Source of the DNA: Podarcis tiliguerta
Taxonomy: Eukaryota
NCBI GenBank assembly: GCA_965153285.1
Contig: OZ229111.1
Reading direction: 5' to 3' (one strand)
Length of the DNA: 64,000 bases
This document shows, in pieces, positions 4,990 through 12,747 of the stretch (its first letter is position 1; each line of letters opens with the position of its first letter). Position numbers and translations under genes: made by a program. Under the pieces are notes generated by a model that was given only the letters and a program-made list of their open reading frames with translations, was not told the origin of the DNA and ran no database searches.

Positions 4990-5214
4990 CTTTATCAACA
5001 CATTGCAGTCAAAAGGGAGGGGAAAAACAAAATTGTATTAGAATTACTCCGGGGAGGAAATAACATTTGTTCCACACTGAAACTATCTAATTAACAATGT
5101 GCCTGAGTTATGGTGCTATAATTTCCTTGTGCTAAATTTTCAAGTCGTTGAACTCGTTCAAGAATTGAAGGTCTCTGGATCTTCAGCTGGGCCCTTTTGC
5201 GCTGTTGACTTCAA

Positions 5215-5248
<34 letters not shown>

Positions 5249-5540
5249 ACTTTATTTTTTTCATTGCAAAATCATGACAAAAATTACGAACTTTGAATCC
5301 AAAAAAATACTATACAAACAAACAAAACGGAACATACAAAAAAAAACCAGAAAAAAGGGGAACAAAACAAAACCAAACAAAAACGAAAAAGCACACATTT
5401 ACAAGAAAAAAAAAAAACATATCATTACATACATTTACACATATTGACTTCCTTTCTTTGTTCTAAAACCTCAGTAAATTTACTCTTACTGTATTGTTGT
5501 GTCTGGTTAAATTACTGTCATCTTTATACTATACATATAC

Positions 5541-5577
<37 letters not shown>

Positions 5578-5657
5578 CTTTCGTAGATTTTCACGGGTAC
5601 AGGAATGCAGGTTTTGGTGTCCTCGGGTGTCTTCCCGTGTAAAAGTTGGGGTGTCTA

Positions 5658-5696
5658 GGCGACGTTTCGACGAGGTCTCACTCGTCATCTTCAGGC
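5658..5696 (-). ncRNA. Second, identical hammerhead motif on the L1/FBLN2 sense strand
   Basis: Exact reverse complement of 6242-6280. Confidence 0.75.
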
Positions 5697-5930
5697 TGGT
5701 GCTTTCGGCTTCTTGTTACTGGAACAGAGCAGGATCTCAGTGTTTGAGTTCCTATAAATACTGTTGAGGAGGTGTGGTGTATAGCCTCCAATGTTCTGGG
5801 CAGAGAGGAGGTTCCCAGGCTAGTGTGCCTTTTCTTCTTTTGTTCCTTAATTACTTGAGGGATATCTTGAGTGATTTCTTGAGTGATTTCCTGAATCCCA
5901 CTTAGGTGGGTCATTAGGTGTGGATTAGTT

Positions 5931-5990
5931 TATATTAGTTTATATTAGTTTATATTAGTTTATATTAGTTTATATTAGTTTATATTAGTT
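5931..5990. repeat. Perfect tandem 10-mer (TATATTAGTT)x6 at the PLE inversion junction
   Basis: Read directly from the sequence. Confidence 0.95.
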
Positions 5991-6241
5991 GTGGATAAGG
6001 CTTTAGCAACTAATCCACACCTAATGACCCACCTAAGTGGGATTCAGGAAATCACTCAAGAAATCACTCAAGATATCCCTCAAGTAATTAAGGAACAAAA
6101 GAAGAAAAGGCACACTAGCCTGGGAACCTCCTCTCTGCCCAGAACATTGGAGGCTATACACCACACCTCCTCAACAGTATTTATAGGAACTCAAACACTG
6201 AGATCCTGCTCTGTTCCAGTAACAAGAAGCCGAAAGCACCA

Positions 6242-6280
6242 GCCTGAAGATGACGAGTGAGACCTCGTCGAAACGTCGCC
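6242..6280 (+). ncRNA. Minimal type I hammerhead ribozyme motif (PLE-type)
   Basis: CTGAAGA (6244-6250), T, stem II GACGAG/CTCGTC with a 6-nt loop, GAAA (6270-6273), then CGTC with the palindromic ACGT and a GTC cleavage triplet. Stem I is only about 2 bp. Confidence 0.75.
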
Positions 6281-6390
6281 TAGACACCCCAACTTTTACA
6301 CGGGAAGACACCCGAGGACACCAAAACCTGCATATATATATATATGTATATATATACACCATTTTTTTTTCCCTTTAACCCTGTAAAGCA

Positions 6391-9300
6391 TCATTCATTA
6401 CATACCAATACACTTACTCCAGAACAATGTTTTTTCATATACTCTTTTGCACAACCCCATTCTTTTAATAATTTCTGGTCCGATTGTCCCCTTATAAATG
6501 CTGTGAGTCTTGCCAGATTTATGTATTCACAAAATTTAATTTGCCAATCTTTCACTGATGGAATTTTCCTCCCTTTCCAGTTTTTTGCTATAAGCATCCT
6601 GGCAGCTGTTGTTGCATAAAGGAATACTTTCCTTTGATTTTCGGGAATATCGTTTGTAATTAATCCTAAAAGGAATGCCTCTGGTTTTTTACTGAAAGAT
6701 ATTTTAAACATCTTTTTGAGTTCTTCGTAAATTTCGTTCCAGAATTGTTTAATAGGTCGGCATTCCCACCACATGTGAAACATTGTTCCTGTTTCGTTTT
6801 TGCATCTCCAACAGGTATTCGAATTTAGTTTATAAATTTTAGCCAGTTTTACCGGAGTTAAGTACCATTGGTACACCATTTTCATAAAGTTTTCTCTTAT
6901 TGTGTAACATGCTGTGAACTTAATATCATATTTCCATAATTTCTCCCACTGTTCTAGCCGAATCGCATATCCTATATCCCATGCCCATTTGATCATAACT
7001 TCTTTTACTTCTTCATCCTTTAATTCCCATTCTAATAAAAAATTATACATTTTGGATATATTTTTTTTGGAGTTTTGTAATAATACTTTTTGTAAATTTG
7101 ATTCATCTTTCTCAAATCCTATTATTTTATCCTGATTGAATATTTGTGCAATTTGGTGATATTGAAACCATGTAGTACAGTATTGGGTCACCTCTTCATA
7201 TGGTCTTAATTTTATTTGACCCTGTTCTTCCTTTAGGAGTTGCTGGTATGTCGCCATTTTCCCTATAGTATTTTTCTTTTTAACAGATGTTACTTCTAAT
7301 GGTGAGACCCACCATGGGGTTTTCGGTTCTAACAACCTTTTATATCTCACCCAGACCTTGTACAATGCATTTCTAATTACGTGGTTTAGGAAATCTTTAT
7401 GTACTGCCACTTTGTTATAAATTAGATATGCATGCCAACCATATCTATTGTTCCATCCCTCCAAATCCAAAATGTCACTGTTATCCAATTTGATCCAATC
7501 CTTGATCCAAGTAAAGCATGCCGCATCGTGATATAGTCTCAGGTCTGGGAGTCCAAAACCTCCCCTATCTTTTATGTCGGTTAGTAATTTGTATTTGATC
7601 CGTGGCTTTTTGCCTTGCCATATAAACTTTGTTAGGTCCGTTTTCCATTTTTTGAAACAATCATCTTTACCTATTATGGGAATCATTTGAAAAAGGAACA
7701 AGAACTTTGGTAAAATATTCATTTTAATAGCCGAAATTCTACCCCAGAGTGTTAAATTCAATCTTGTCCAAGTTTCCATTTCTCTTTTTGTTTCTTCCCA
7801 GTTTTTTTTATAATTATCTTCAAACAAATTTATATTTTTCATTGTTATTTGTATCCCTAGATATTTCACTTTTTTTACAATTTGTAATCCAAATTTTTCT
7901 ACCAGTTCCTTTTTCTCTTGATCTCCCATGTTTTTTACCATTAGTTTCGTTTTTTCTTTATTCAAAGCAAAACCTGAGACCCTTCCAAAGTTTCCCATTT
8001 TTTCTAGAGCTTTTGCTATGCTTTCCTTTGGGTTTTCCACCATTAAGACTAAATCATCTGCAAATGCCCTTATTTTGTATATTTTCTCTCCTAGGGATAT
8101 TCCATTTATTTCTTGATCCAGTCTGATTTCTTGATTTAATATTTCCAAAACCAAAATGAATAATAACGGTGAGAGTGGGCACCCTTGTCTGGTGCCCTTC
8201 TGTATTTTAAAATAATCAGTTGTGTCATTATTTATTATTATATTTGCTTCTTGTTGTTCATAAATTGCTTTTAGCCCTCTTGTAATTTGGTCCCCCATGT
8301 CCATCTGGTCTAATAATATTTTTAGAAATTTCCATGATACTTTATCAAACGCCTTTTCCGCGTCCACAAAGACAAAGGCTACCTTCTTACTCGGTTTCAT
8401 GTCTAAATACTCGATCATATCAATCACTGTTCTTATATTATCACTCATTTTCCTGCCTGGCAAGAACCCTGCCTGCTCTTTATTTATGCAATCCTGCAAA
8501 ACTGTCTTTAATCTTGTTGCCAATATTTGTGCATAGATCTTATAATCATTATTTAGTAATGATATTGGTCTATAATTGGTTATAAACTCTTTATTTCGTC
8601 CTTGTTTTGGGATTACTACTATGTGAGCCTGTTTCCAGGTGTTGGGAATCTTCCCGTCTTCTAGTATTCTATTTAAGAGTGTCTTCATAGGTGATAATAA
8701 TGGTTCCTCTAGTTTTTTGTAATGTATTGCGGTAAGACCATCTGGACCTGGGGATTTTCCCAGTTTCATCTTAATTATCGCTTGATGAAGCTCTGTCGTG
8801 GTTATTGGGGAGTTTAGATCTTGAATCTTTTCTTTCTTAATTTTAGGTATATCCTTTCCATATAAATACTCTTTTATTTCATCCTCTGTCTCATTTCCTG
8901 CTTTATATAGCTTGTTATAATATTTTATAAAGCACTTTTTGACTTCTTCAGGATTATCTAAAGTTCTCCCTTCTTCCACTATTTTATCAATCAGTTTTTC
9001 CTTTTGTCTTTTTTTCAATTGCCAGGCTAGCATCTTTCCGGGTTTATTTGCAAATTCGAACGACCTTTGTTTCATCCATTTAATATTATCCTCAATTTCA
9101 CTATTTAATATTGCTGAAGCCTGGGTTTGTAATATTTTTAGTTTTTGGTTTATTAGTTCATTTTTTGGTTGTTTTGTTAATAATTTTTCATTTATTCCTA
9201 TTTCTTTCCTTATTTGTTCTAGTTTTTGCTCTCTGATTCTTTTCCTTATTGCACTTTGTTGTATGTAAAAGCCTCTTATGAAAGCTTTACTTGCATCCCA

Positions 9301-10143
9301 TATTGTCCTGATGTCTGTATCCTGTTCTTTATTTAATTCAAAAAATTCTTTCATTAGTTCTTGCGCTTTTTTCACAATCTTTTCATCATTTAATATTCTT
9401 TCATTAAGTCTCCATCTTTTATTAGTTTTCTTGTATTCCTTTAATTCTAATGTGACTGGGTTGTGGTCTGTAATAATTTTGGTCTGTATTTCTGCTTTTT
9501 TAATTTTAGTTGTTAAATTATTTGATACCCATATGCTGTCAATTCTGCCGGCTGATTTTTTAACTTCCGAGAAATGTGTATACTGTCTTTCTCCTGGGTT
9601 TTTATATCTCCATGTGTCAATCAAATTTAAGTTTTCTACCATCTGAAAGAAGGTATCTGGGAGTCTGCCTTTTTTTGATTTTCTTTCCCTCTCTGTCCTA
9701 TCTAATTCTATTGATGTGACACCATTTAGGTCTCCCATCAGAATAATTTCCTCTTCTATAAATTCCAGTAAATTAGCTTCTACTTTCCTGAAGAATTCTG
9801 TTTTGTTACCATTCGGTGCATAAACTCCTACTATAATTAAATGTTCTTTACCCTTTGTTATTTTTACCCCTAATAATCTACCTTCATCATCCTTAAAGAT
9901 TTTTTTTGCGTCTAGTTTAGGGTTCACATAGATCACAATTCCCCTTTTCTTTTTCACATCTGAGGATATAAATTCTTGACCCAATCTCTTGTTTTCTAAA
10001 ACCCTTCTGTGATTTCTAGTCACATGGGTCTCCTGCAAGCATATGATATCCCATTGTTCTTTCCTCAATACATGTCCTATTTTATTTCTCTTCCTCTTAT
10101 CATTTAAACCGTTAACATTCCAAGATATAATTTTTAGGTTCAT
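6391..10143 (-). CDS. L1 ORF2p: APE endonuclease, reverse transcriptase and C-terminal CCHC, 1250 aa
   Basis: APE motifs WNVNGL, LQETH, GVYAPN, GDLN, RIDSIW, TDH. RT motifs GKSPGPDG, YRPISLLN, DAEKAFD, RQGCPLSP, FADD, KYLGI. Cys knuckle CWRC-x8-H-x4-C. No stops or frameshifts. Confidence 0.98.
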   Translation of the reverse strand: MNLKIISWNVNGLNDKRKRNKIGHVLRKEQWDIICLQETHVTRNHRRVLENKRLGQEFISSDVKKKRGIVIYVNPKLDAKKIFKDDEGRLLGVKITKGKEHLIIVGVYAPNGNKTEFFRKVEANLLEFIEEEIILMGDLNGVTSIELDRTERERKSKKGRLPDTFFQMVENLNLIDTWRYKNPGERQYTHFSEVKKSAGRIDSIWVSNNLTTKIKKAEIQTKIITDHNPVTLELKEYKKTNKRWRLNERILNDEKIVKKAQELMKEFFELNKEQDTDIRTIWDASKAFIRGFYIQQSAIRKRIREQKLEQIRKEIGINEKLLTKQPKNELINQKLKILQTQASAILNSEIEDNIKWMKQRSFEFANKPGKMLAWQLKKRQKEKLIDKIVEEGRTLDNPEEVKKCFIKYYNKLYKAGNETEDEIKEYLYGKDIPKIKKEKIQDLNSPITTTELHQAIIKMKLGKSPGPDGLTAIHYKKLEEPLLSPMKTLLNRILEDGKIPNTWKQAHIVVIPKQGRNKEFITNYRPISLLNNDYKIYAQILATRLKTVLQDCINKEQAGFLPGRKMSDNIRTVIDMIEYLDMKPSKKVAFVFVDAEKAFDKVSWKFLKILLDQMDMGDQITRGLKAIYEQQEANIIINNDTTDYFKIQKGTRQGCPLSPLLFILVLEILNQEIRLDQEINGISLGEKIYKIRAFADDLVLMVENPKESIAKALEKMGNFGRVSGFALNKEKTKLMVKNMGDQEKKELVEKFGLQIVKKVKYLGIQITMKNINLFEDNYKKNWEETKREMETWTRLNLTLWGRISAIKMNILPKFLFLFQMIPIIGKDDCFKKWKTDLTKFIWQGKKPRIKYKLLTDIKDRGGFGLPDLRLYHDAACFTWIKDWIKLDNSDILDLEGWNNRYGWHAYLIYNKVAVHKDFLNHVIRNALYKVWVRYKRLLEPKTPWWVSPLEVTSVKKKNTIGKMATYQQLLKEEQGQIKLRPYEEVTQYCTTWFQYHQIAQIFNQDKIIGFEKDESNLQKVLLQNSKKNISKMYNFLLEWELKDEEVKEVMIKWAWDIGYAIRLEQWEKLWKYDIKFTACYTIRENFMKMVYQWYLTPVKLAKIYKLNSNTCWRCKNETGTMFHMWWECRPIKQFWNEIYEELKKMFKISFSKKPEAFLLGLITNDIPENQRKVFLYATTAARMLIAKNWKGRKIPSVKDWQIKFCEYINLARLTAFIRGQSDQKLLKEWGCAKEYMKKHCSGVSVLVCNE

Positions 10144-10291
10144 TAATCTTTATTATCTACAAAGGTTTCATTGAGTAAATAAAAGAAAAGAAAAGAAAAA
10201 GAAAAAGACTCACAAATTTTTAGAATTTTGATATTATGTTTCTTCCAATCTCTCTCCCCCCCCCCGATATCCGCTTGACTCTCTATGCTTC

Positions 10292-11224
10292 TTATGGTGT
10301 CTGCGTTGCCTCCTCTCGGTCCAATGTCGGATCTCCAGTTAGTTCTTTTTTATACTTCCTCCAGAATTTTCCCAGCTCGTCTACTGATCTAAAAGTTTTT
10401 CTTCTGTCCTTGTATGTGAAGGTGATGCCCTCAGGGAATTCCCACCGGAATCTAATCGAATTCTTCTTGAGTGCTTCTGTTACTGTCTTATAATTCTGCC
10501 TTTTCTTCAAAATTCTTTTTGGAATTTCTTTGAATATTTTGATAGGCCTATCTTCTATTATTAACTTTGCTTGTCCTTTTTGATGTAATATTTTGTCCTT
10601 TAAAAGTCTTGAGTTGAAAAAGATTAAGCAATCTCCTGGCCCTTTATAAGTGTCCGATCTTTCTGATTTGATCCTGAAAATTTTATCAATATCCAATAGC
10701 ATCTCTTCTACTTCTACTCCCAACCAGTTTGCAATCTCCTGTGATAGTTTCTCTTGAATTTGTTCATCGTAAGTTTGTGGTACGCCTCGGAAGCGGAGGA
10801 CCATCTCCTTCTGGCGCATCTCCATCAATGATAAATCATCTAACAGCTCTTCATGAGCTCTCTTTAAGTCGTTAATTTCTTCCTTCGTTGATTCTTGTGA
10901 CTTTTTAATGTCCTTATTTTCAATTTGCAATTTCTTCGTCATTTCCTCTTGTTTGGTGGATTTACTCTTAAGTTCTTGTACAGATTTATCCAGTTCTTTA
11001 TTTTTAAGTGAGAGGTCACTTATTTGTGTTGTTAAGTCTATTATTAGCTTTGAGTTTTGTTGGATGTTACCAGCTAATATGTCCAGCTTATCATTCAGGC
11101 TTTTTTCCATCCCCATTATAAGATCTTTTATGTCAGCATTGGGGTCTGTTTCAGCTGTTGATTGTCTTCTCACTTGTAGACCCGACCCAGATGTCAGTAT
11201 AGTTTGGTATTTTTTAGAAGCCAT
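10292..11224 (-). CDS. L1 ORF1p (coiled coil plus RRM/CTD RNA-binding protein), 310 aa
   Basis: Long heptad-rich N-terminal region, then LRFRGVP, IKIFKEIP and FRWEFPEG motifs typical of non-mammalian L1 ORF1. Lies upstream of ORF2 with a 148-bp spacer. Confidence 0.9.
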   Translation of the reverse strand: MASKKYQTILTSGSGLQVRRQSTAETDPNADIKDLIMGMEKSLNDKLDILAGNIQQNSKLIIDLTTQISDLSLKNKELDKSVQELKSKSTKQEEMTKKLQIENKDIKKSQESTKEEINDLKRAHEELLDDLSLMEMRQKEMVLRFRGVPQTYDEQIQEKLSQEIANWLGVEVEEMLLDIDKIFRIKSERSDTYKGPGDCLIFFNSRLLKDKILHQKGQAKLIIEDRPIKIFKEIPKRILKKRQNYKTVTEALKKNSIRFRWEFPEGITFTYKDRRKTFRSVDELGKFWRKYKKELTGDPTLDREEATQTP

Positions 11225-12747
11225 AATTGTCTTCTTCCTTTCGGCTCTGGTCTAGATGTCTTTATTTCAGTCAAGAATATATATATTCCTAAAACTTTGA
11301 AAATGCTCTGTTTATAGTCTATGATTTGGTCCTTTTATTCCATCTGTTGGGATTGAAAGTCAGTTAAGATTCCAGTGGTTTCCACTATATCATTACCAGT
11401 TCATCTCAAATATTTAAAAAAAAATCAAAAAAAAATAAAATATCAAAGTTTTAATATAAATTTAGTTAAATATTTTGTTTTATTTTAATTATTTTGGCAG
11501 TTGACTTCAATCTCTATGGATTGCTTCTGCAAACTTCTCCTTCAGCTTCCTTGGATTTAGTGGTGCTTTCTCTTACTTCTTACATGCCAAAGAGGCAGAA
11601 GGTGAAATACTGAAGTCATCAGGGTGAGGAAGGTCCTTCCCAACAGAAACATATTTGCTTCTGCTATTAGTTCTAGCAGACTAGTCACACAATACACATG
11701 TGAGGTCGCTTTGCACAATACTATCTTTGACATATTGAACTGAATGGCAAAGTCATTGCCCAAGAGGAGCACATATGACAGTCTTTAAGTGACTCTCATT
11801 GGCCCTCAGCCAGAGTGGTTTCCTATTCAGTTTGCCGTGAGAAACAGAACATTTTCTCCTTACTATCAAATCGCTCGCTCGCTCTCTTTTAGTTTGCGGT
11901 GGCATGAAGGAAATGCCCCAATTCCTGTGGTATGCTCTTGCTTAAGCAAGACCTTCTTGCGTACAAGAAGCAACCACAGGAGGCTTTCAATGCAGTTTTC
12001 ACACTGTGGGTCATACACCAGCACTTAAGTAATGGGCAAAAATGAGAGCTTTGGTCTGATCATGAGGAAGGCAATGAAGGAGGTGCTTGACTCTTAATTG
12101 GCACTTAAATTAATTTATTTTCCACCCAGCGATATGTATCTCTAAGACAGAAAATTAACTTAGGTGCATGACAACATCAGTGGGAGTGCAGGCTTCATAG
12201 GGCACTGAAAATAATGAATGGCAGTTTTATACATCAGATTTTAAAGCAGGCCTGTGGCCTCACATATGGGGTTCACCCTAATTTCACAGAGGGGAGAAAA
12301 GGTGGGGAAAAGATGGCACAGAAAGAGAAAACTGGGGAGGGGAAAATACACACACATACACATTGTACTAACGTTTGGCCTTCAGCCCAGTCATGAGAAG
12401 CGTCAGCCCTGTTGACACGTGGCTCTCAACAGAAACCCCAGAAGGGAATGTGACCCTAGACACATTCTCCCTGTTTTTGAGACAGCAAATGCTGTTCAAG
12501 ATCATCCACAACCCTTTACCCGACAGCTATTTAGCATGATGTATAAAACAGGCCATCCATGTTTGCGACTTGCCTCCAACAACATCAATGAACTGAGCAA
12601 CTGGGCTGCCCAACACCTCTTGTGTCATGGCCTGCACCAGTTAGCTAATGTTCTCATGAACCACTCTTGCAAACAAGCTGCTAGGAAGCTTCCCTGATAC
12701 ATTTCCATGTATGAAATGGAGTAAATAGAATTTCAGCATTCACGTAC

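What the first reader, a model, noticed from the sequence alone, without database searches (positions are those of the whole stretch)
5576..6333. Ribozyme-bearing Penelope hairpin nested in the 3' UTR of an intact L1
Seen: a perfect ~326-bp inverted repeat (5605-5930 / 6008-6333) lies between the L1 ORF2 stop and its poly(A). Each arm has a CTGAAGA-stem II-GAAACGTC hammerhead motif, and both 3' ends abut a (TA)n tract. Established: Penelope-like elements carry minimal hammerheads in their pseudo-LTRs and often insert as inverted, 5'-truncated pairs. Inference: any L1 or FBLN2 transcript through this region contains a long dsRNA and a possible self-cleavage site upstream of the L1 poly(A). The PLE may have disabled the L1 after insertion. 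Alternatively it may ride inside the L1 RNA as a co-mobilised composite element, which would be unusual.
Basis: partly seen in the sequence, partly recalled or inferred. Interest (0 to 1): 0.8.

Follow-up and report, generated by a model that had tools for sequence, protein, structure and literature searches.

The report
Penelope inverted pair inside young L1
A jumping gene of the Penelope type landed as two head-to-head broken copies in a TA-repeat in the tail of a young, intact lizard L1 element; this is the usual way such elements insert, and nothing here shows that the two travel together.

Summary
A 326-nt, 100% inverted repeat (5605-5930 / 6008-6333) lies inside a 6,280-nt minus-strand L1. 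That L1 has intact ORF1 and ORF2, a 25-nt poly(A) and a perfect 16-bp target-site duplication.

The arms are two 5'-truncated, head-to-head copies of a very high-copy Poseidon-type Penelope-like element (PLE).
- Each carries a minimal hammerhead with the ORF start codon at the base of stem II, as in the tested anole element Poseidon_Ac.
- The right copy ends at +82/84 of that ORF. The left copy has a further 30-nt "tail" ending at +114, inside the published reverse-transcription start window (+111-118).
- Other copies in two lizard species end at the same base against (TA)n.

So this is an ordinary double-ended PLE insertion into the (TA)n tract of the L1 3'UTR. This scan has noted many such pairs in the same genome.

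Rfam hammerhead models do not match. In L1 or host-gene RNA the ribozyme is buried in a -687 kcal/mol hairpin, and RNA reads show no pile-up of ends, so self-cleavage is unlikely.

I put it at about 0.15. Interest is low.

The parts
11500..11515 (-). 5' target-site duplication of the L1 (AGAGATTGAAGTCAAC)
   Evidence: Identical to 5219-5204
5220..11499 (-). Full-length L1 unit, 6,280 nt including the nested cassette
   Evidence: Bounded by the 16-bp duplications and the poly(A)
10292..11224 (-). L1 ORF1, 310 aa, open
   Evidence: Only sub-threshold coiled-coil-type Pfam matches
6391..10143 (-). L1 ORF2, 1250 aa, open, with endonuclease and reverse transcriptase
   Evidence: Pfam Exo_endo_phos 2.2e-11 and RVT_1 4.8e-38
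6334..6390 (-). Proximal L1 3'UTR, including the right part of the (TA)n tract (6334-6356)
   Evidence: Contig depth is of L1 scale
5997..6333 (+). Right PLE copy: 5'-truncated at about 5997, 3' end at +82/84 of the PLE ORF, no tail
   Evidence: Loose ends before 5997 show that other copies continue 5'. ATG at 6250
6244..6277 (+). Minimal hammerhead motif of the right copy; predicted cut at 6277|6278
   Evidence: Features as in PMC4209133 and PMC11167929
5931..5996 (.). Spacer: six copies of TATATTAGTT followed by GTGGAT; not part of the repeat family
   Evidence: (family D2). Depth 466/373/3701 against 1e5-6e5 in the arms
5605..5930 (-). Left PLE copy, 5'-truncated at 5930
5661..5694 (-). Minimal hammerhead motif of the left copy, in sense on L1 and host-gene RNA; predicted cut at 5661|5660
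5575..5604 (-). 30-nt PLE 'tail' extending the left copy to +114 of the PLE ORF
   Evidence: The frame stays open through it. It matches the optional 30-40-nt tail and the +111-118 RT start of Poseidon_Ac. Most other copies lack it: 16, 6 and 17 contigs show (TA)n directly before 5605
5530..5574 (.). Left part of the (TA)n/(TACA)n tract, the insertion target
5245..5529 (-). Distal L1 3'UTR with an AATAAA signal
   Evidence: Contig depth is of the same scale as the ORF2 3' end (1e4-5e4 in X1), so it belongs to the L1 family and is not transduced unique DNA
5220..5244 (-). L1 poly(A), 25 nt, pure
5204..5219 (-). 3' target-site duplication of the L1
4849..4989 (-). Host exon encoding a calcium-binding EGF domain, about 215 nt downstream of the L1 on the same strand
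   Evidence: Pfam EGF_CA 1.8e-10. The gene name FBLN2 was not verified

Best explanation
The cassette is a dead-on-arrival insertion of a Poseidon-type Penelope-like element, most likely made after the L1 had arrived at this site. The PLE ribonucleoprotein cut both strands of the AT-rich (TA)n tract in the L1 3'UTR. Both freed 3' ends primed reverse transcription inside the PLE RNA at its two usual start sites, +84 on the right and +114 on the left. Both cDNAs stopped early. They were then joined head-to-head through a 66-nt filler of TATATTAGTT repeats.

Shown here: the anatomy, the termini, the TA target, the family's very high copy number and the L1 boundaries.

Inferred: the double-ended priming mechanism, taken from published in-vitro work on Poseidon_Ac, and the order of events (L1 first, then PLE).

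The hammerhead is the ordinary protein-assisted PLE motif. It has no likely role in L1 or host-gene RNA because the hairpin sequesters it.
For: 1) Hammerhead. [quoted passage not shown] The PAc-style layout with ATG at the base of stem II occurs only at the two arms, 0 expected.
2) Poseidon_Ac comparison. Read in tandem, the consensus has the same layout (CTGAGG-ATG...GGGC-GAAACGTC). Its cut is 26 nt after the start codon; here it is 25 nt. Three helix II pairs and two helix I pairs differ on both sides yet still pair (by eye).
3) Termini. They lie at +82/84 and +114, 30 nt apart. The published tail is 30-40 nt, lies between two RT start sites, and the distal site is at +111-118.
4) Other copies. 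In two species they end at the same base against (TA)n: 16, 6 and 17 contigs and 14 RNA reads. They also continue 5' past 5997: 15 and 46 contigs, 24 reads.
5) Copy number. Arm depth is 1e5-6e5, against 104, 11 and 55 for the single-copy flank.
6) Other pairs. 23 joints between the arms at other positions suggest other head-to-head pairs with different truncation points.
7) Literature. Inverted 5'-truncated pairs, a one-sided tail and a microsatellite bias are described for PLEs (PMC8557442). Dual min-HHRs on opposite strands 100-700 bp apart are reported (PMC4209133). PAc cuts and extends both strands of AT-rich DNA.
8) Order of events. The 173 adenosines of a perfect duplex show no A-to-G mismatch. 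That has a probability of 0.18 at 1% editing per site and 0.03 at 2% if the cassette had passed through L1 RNA.
Against: No copy of this family with an RT/GIY-YIG ORF could be fetched, so the link to a PLE polyprotein rests on homology of layout with Poseidon_Ac. Nucleotide similarity to that consensus is patchy and was judged by eye only. Rfam hammerhead models give no hit. Helix I has only 2 contiguous pairs. The joints have short sides (22-30 nt) and could be graph artefacts. The order of events is not shown. The L1 looks very young, and flank contigs in three runs run 688-866 nt past the L1 boundary without matching it, which suggests an empty site. That leaves little time for a second hit in place.
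Confidence: 0.75

Rival explanations
1. Co-mobilised composite. The PLE pair inserted into the (TA)n tract of a progenitor L1, and L1 machinery then copied the whole RNA, hairpin included, to this site.
For: The cassette lies inside the target-site duplications and upstream of the poly(A). The L1 appears very young, and an empty site probably exists in three runs (table 8; inference). Young full-length L1s in lizards are typically at low frequency (abstracts of PMC3787681 and PMC5389967). So the time window for a second hit at this site was short.
Against: A perfect 326-bp duplex in nuclear RNA should be edited, cut or skipped by the reverse transcriptase, yet the arms have 0 mismatches. In run X1 the letters private to this L1 copy (5288, 5292, 6949) have depth 0-45, below the single-copy depth of 104. 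That gives no sign of sibling copies (table 3), although contigs can drop rare variants. The exact ORF1p and ORF2p are not found elsewhere in the protein collection. The PLE family is far more abundant than the L1 and targets (TA)n, so independent hits on L1 tails are expected.
Confidence: 0.15
2. L1 3' transduction. The L1 read through its own end and carried downstream flanking DNA, including the TA tract, the PLE pair and 285 nt more, from the progenitor locus.
For: A short A9 run lies 20-30 nt after the ORF2 stop (6362-6370), just before the TA tract. It could be read as an older L1 end.
Against: The distal stretch 5261-5528 has contig depth 1e4-5e4 in X1, the same scale as the ORF2 3' end and not the roughly 100 of unique DNA. 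It is also present in the second species.
Confidence: 0.04
3. Assembly artefact: a fold-back read or mis-join created the palindrome.
For: PLE inverted structures are known to trouble assemblies (PMC8557442). No single contig or read spanning the whole cassette was seen.
Against: The two copies are not simple mirror images: the 30-nt tail is on the left only, and there are 11 extra inner nucleotides on the right. The two outer flanks are the two halves of one L1 3'UTR. The same architecture is reported for PLEs in general.
Confidence: 0.03
4. Fold-back DNA transposon or MITE with a TA target duplication.
For: Long terminal inverted repeats flanked by TA.
Against: Other copies continue 5' beyond the inner edge without the inverted partner, and truncation points vary. 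The ends are asymmetric. The hammerhead/ATG layout is homologous to Poseidon_Ac.
Confidence: 0.02

Closest known systems
Poseidon_Ac (PAc), Penelope/Poseidon-clade PLE of Anolis carolinensis (Frangieh et al. 2024, PMC11167929; Arkhipova 2006)
   Same: Minimal hammerhead with the ORF start codon spanning A9-U-G10.1. Identical GAAACGUC box. Cut 25-26 nt after the start codon. A 6-bp helix II and a 2-3-bp helix I. Insertion ends at two internal sites about 30 nt apart, the distal one at +111-118. AT-rich target. Both DNA strands used as primers.
   Different: A different family. Helix II, the pLTR and the first 38 codons differ in sequence (by eye). The host is a lacertid lizard rather than an anole. 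No coding body is present at this locus.
Minimal hammerheads of metazoan PLEs (Cervera and De la Pena 2014, PMC4209133)
   Same: No stable helix III, palindromic positions 15.2-16.2, an extra nucleotide before stem II, a long helix II and a short helix I. Pairs of motifs on opposite strands 100-700 bp apart.
   Different: Helix I is at the short extreme (2 bp), as in the D. virilis variant.
Complex tandem or inverted PLE insertion units with a one-sided tail (Craig et al. 2021, PMC8557442)
   Same: An inverted 5'-truncated copy, a 30-40-bp tail at one end only, a (TA)n target, and no discernible target duplication.
   Different: There is no full-length copy between the inverted parts. Both copies are short (326+30 and 337 nt).
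Animal non-LTR retrozymes (Cervera and De la Pena 2020, PMC7229834; Li et al. 2026 preprint)
   Same: Unit size of about 300 nt with a type-I hammerhead derived from PLE pLTRs.
   Different: Retrozymes are head-to-tail tandem arrays that give circular RNAs. This is a head-to-head pair.

Membership tests
Penelope-like element, Penelope/Poseidon clade | Minimal type-I hammerhead near the 3' end or in the pLTR: CUGANGA, GAAA and UH boxes, an extra nucleotide between 9 and 10.1, G10.1-C11.1, palindromic 15.2-16.2 | tested here: met
   against the criteria
Penelope-like element, Penelope/Poseidon clade | ORF start codon at the base of hammerhead stem II, with the cut about 26 nt downstream (PAc) | tested here: met
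   ATG at 6250-6252, cut after 6277, 25 nt apart. Poseidon_Ac consensus and text
Penelope-like element, Penelope/Poseidon clade | Insertion ends at internal RT start sites, with an optional 30-40-nt tail at one end | tested here: met
   Ends at +82/84 and +114, tail of 30 nt. Published +111-118. Other copies end at 5605
Penelope-like element, Penelope/Poseidon clade | AT-rich or (TA)n target, with frequent inverted 5'-truncated partners | tested here: met
   literature
Penelope-like element, Penelope/Poseidon clade | Family members encode a telomerase-like RT fused to a GIY-YIG endonuclease | not testable with these tools
The only protein matching the arm's open frame is a host TSNAX with an exonised fragment
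Penelope-like element, Penelope/Poseidon clade | Nucleotide similarity to a curated PLE consensus (Dfam or Repbase) | tested here: inconclusive
   Only Poseidon_Ac was available. It was compared by eye: same layout, patchy similarity in +60 to +115. No tool alignment was run because the consensus has no reference id
Rfam hammerhead families (types I-III, HH9, HH10) | Covariance-model match | tested here: not met
   No hammerhead hit at E<=1 over 2 kb or at E<=10 over 151 nt. Motifs without helix III are not modelled
Animal non-LTR retrozyme | Head-to-tail tandem repeats, each with a hammerhead | tested here: not met
   The two copies are inverted and there is no direct repeat of the unit
L1 (LINE-1) full-length element | ORF1 plus ORF2 with APE endonuclease and RT, poly(A) tail, target-site duplication | tested here: met
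Composite element mobilised by L1 | Two or more L1 loci with different target duplications and the same internal cassette junctions | not testable with these tools
   No genome-wide search is available. Read laying masks the TA junctions

The most novel reading that the evidence does not exclude
An active lizard L1 lineage acquired a Penelope hairpin in its 3'UTR and still retrotransposes. That would make an L1-PLE composite in which a 326-bp perfect RNA duplex and a hammerhead pass unedited and uncut through L1 target-primed reverse transcription.
Probability: 0.15. Interest if true: 0.5.

Novelty: already known. Interest (0 to 1): 0.2.

Why it matters
As it stands this is a textbook nested insertion. 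Its use is as a clean natural example of the double-ended, internally primed insertion seen in vitro for Poseidon_Ac. One end uses each of the two RT start sites, and this is in a different lizard family, which suggests those sites are conserved across lizard PLE families. If the cassette proved to be carried by several L1 copies, it would show that L1 can copy through a long perfect hairpin. It would also show that such RNA can escape editing in the germ line, which would be of moderate interest to transposon biologists.

Tried and rejected
- Rfam scans at relaxed thresholds gave only generic long-hairpin miRNA models and no hammerhead.
- BLAST of the arm and of the L1 against the window found no other copies.
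- I treated the 86-codon open frame of the arm as a possible PLE C-terminus and searched it by HMMER against 1.84 billion proteins. The single hit is a Podarcis muralis TSNAX model with the fragment as its last exon. The frame is therefore no evidence of PLE coding sequence.
- The exact ORF1p and ORF2p are not in the protein collection.
- Scan notes gave no other L1 with the cassette.
- Read laying could not show L1 copies lacking the cassette, because the TA tracts on both sides are skipped as repeats.
- No tool alignment with Poseidon_Ac was made, because its sequence exists only as paper text. It was compared by eye.
- The large word-based protein search was not used, as the operators advised.
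- 3' transduction was rejected on depth. MITE and assembly-artefact readings were rejected on the asymmetry of the copies and the behaviour of other copies.

Full report
**Observation**

The inverted repeat is real and exact. The arms are 5605-5930 and 6008-6333, 326 nt, 100% complementary, with 77 nt between them. As RNA the region folds into one hairpin of -687 kcal/mol, z = -52.9 against shuffles. Each arm carries CTGAAGA-T-GACGAG(TGAGAC)CTCGTC-GAAA-CG-TC, at 6244-6277 on the + strand and 5694-5661 on the - strand.

**The L1**

On the minus strand there is an open ORF1 (10292-11224, 310 aa) and an open ORF2 (6391-10143, 1250 aa). ORF2 has Exo_endo_phos and RVT_1 domains.
- A pure 25-nt poly(A) lies at 5244-5220, preceded by AATAAA.
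- Identical 16-bp duplications AGAGATTGAAGTCAAC lie at 11515-11500 and 5219-5204.
- The unit is 6,280 nt, and the cassette starts 57 nt after the ORF2 stop, so it is inside the L1.
- The distal 3'UTR (5245-5529) has contig depth of the same scale as the ORF2 3' end in two species. It is therefore L1 sequence, not transduced unique DNA.
- A calcium-binding EGF exon lies about 215 nt downstream on the same strand. I did not verify the gene name.

**What the arms are**

Rfam finds no hammerhead, even at E<=10 on 151 nt. The motif does, however, meet the features that Cervera and De la Pena (PMC4209133) found in PLE minimal hammerheads without having searched for them:
- a G10.1-C11.1 pair;
- a palindromic 15.2-16.2 (ACGU);
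- a long helix II (6 bp) and a short helix I (2 bp here, as in D. virilis).

They also report pairs of such motifs on opposite strands 100-700 bp apart.

Frangieh et al. (PMC11167929) describe the anole element Poseidon_Ac (PAc):
- Reverse transcription starts inside the RNA at +111-118.
- The optional 30-40-nt tail is the stretch between two start sites.
- The enzyme cuts AT-rich DNA and extends both strands.

Here the ATG is at 6250 (5688 on the other arm) and the cut would fall 25 nt after the start codon. The right copy ends at +82/84, and the left copy plus a 30-nt non-repeated stretch (5575-5604) ends at +114. The frame stays open through that stretch.

The Poseidon_Ac consensus in their File S1, read in tandem, gives CTGAGG-ATG...GGGC-GAAACGTC. 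By eye, three helix II pairs and two helix I pairs differ from ours on both sides and still pair. The shared pattern CTGANGATG-N12-22-CGAAACGTC occurs only at the two arms, with 0.00 expected.

**Evidence from reads**

I laid the contigs of two runs of organism A (the source species, judged by flank identity), the contigs of one run of a sister species B, and raw RNA reads of B.
- Depth: arms 1e5-6e5, single-copy flank 104/11/55, L1 parts 1e3-6e4, spacer only 466/373/3701.
- Loose ends: other copies stop at exactly 5605 against (TA)n (16, 6 and 17 contigs; 14 RNA reads). They continue 5' beyond 5997 with a common sequence (15 and 46 contigs; 24 reads).
- The arms are therefore 3'-terminal fragments of a very abundant, TA-targeting, transcribed family. 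Most copies lack the tail.
- 23 joints between the arms at other positions suggest other head-to-head pairs with other truncation points. Their sides are short (22-30 nt), so this is weak evidence.
- No place in the RNA shows molecules beginning or ending in excess.

**Host**

The arm's open frame (6000-6257) hit one protein among 1.84 billion. It is TSNAX of Podarcis muralis, with a Translin domain at its N-terminus and the PLE fragment as its C-terminal 86 residues at 95% identity. This is an exonised copy, not a PLE protein. It does place the family in lacertid lizards.

**Mechanism**

The most likely course is one insertion event.
1. Both strands of the (TA)n tract were cut.
2. Each 3' end primed on PLE RNA at one of the two usual start sites.
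3. Both cDNAs ended early, at 5930 and 5997.
4. They were joined through a 66-nt filler.

The anatomy is shown here. The steps are inferred from the in-vitro work. The filler, six copies of TATATTAGTT whose last seven bases equal the inner end of the left copy, is unexplained. Repeated template switching is one possibility.

A transcript through the region would indeed carry a long duplex. Self-cleavage is unlikely for three reasons. The motif is fully paired with the other arm. PAc's ribozyme works only with its protein and is not needed for insertion. No read ends pile up.

**Co-mobilisation**

For it: the cassette is inside the L1 unit, and the L1 seems very recent. Flank contigs of 1671, 1731 and 1831 nt run 688-866 nt past 5207 without matching the L1. 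That suggests an empty allele, but this is only an inference.

Against it:
- The arms show no mismatch, although 173 adenosines would sit in a perfect duplex on L1 RNA. The chance of no editing is 0.18 at 1% per site and 0.03 at 2%.
- The private letters of this L1 copy are at or below single-copy depth in X1 (table 3).
- The PLE family is far more abundant than the L1 and targets exactly this kind of tract.

I put co-mobilisation at 0.15.

**Verdict**

This is an ordinary nested Poseidon-type PLE insertion of a known kind. This scan has noted many such inverted pairs in the same genome, and one follow-up on another locus reached the same reading. I used those notes as leads only.

Noticed in passing
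window 5931-5996: The filler between the two PLE copies is six copies of TATATTAGTT followed by GTGGAT. The last seven bases of each unit equal the inner end of the left copy (ATTAGTT), and GTGGAT repeats 5919-5924. This looks like repeated template switching at the 5' junction, but it is unexplained.
   Followed up: partly
window 5605-6333 (RNA run X23 of the sister species): Among places with other letters, the RNA reads show A>G at 29 and T>C at 27, against G>A at 12 and C>T at 8. DNA contigs of the same species show A>G 11, T>C 5, G>A 17, C>T 11. This may reflect A-to-I editing of hairpins of this family. It needs DNA and RNA from one animal.
   Followed up: no
protein P0001 (Podarcis muralis TSNAX, UniRef100_A0A670HLY4), residues 183-268: A host gene model ends in an exon made from this PLE family's pLTR, read in the frame that is open across the arm and stops in hammerhead loop II. 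This is exonisation, or an annotation artefact.
   Followed up: partly
window 5060-5207 and beyond: Flank contigs in three runs (two of the source species, one of a sister species) continue 688-866 nt past the L1 boundary without matching the L1. The L1 insertion may therefore be polymorphic or private to the assembled animal.
   Followed up: partly
window 5697 (RNA run X23): Seven reads join unrelated sequence to the arm directly after an AG in element sense (..CCAG|CCUGAAGA), at the 5' edge of hammerhead helix I. In D. virilis Penelope an intron ends at that same point (PMC4209133). This may be a splice acceptor.
   Followed up: no
window 5661-5730 and 6208-6277: None of the best-supported differences between the two species' copies fall in the hammerhead or ORF-start third of the arm. 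Six fall upstream of it (table 3; 86 rows were not shown).
   Followed up: no
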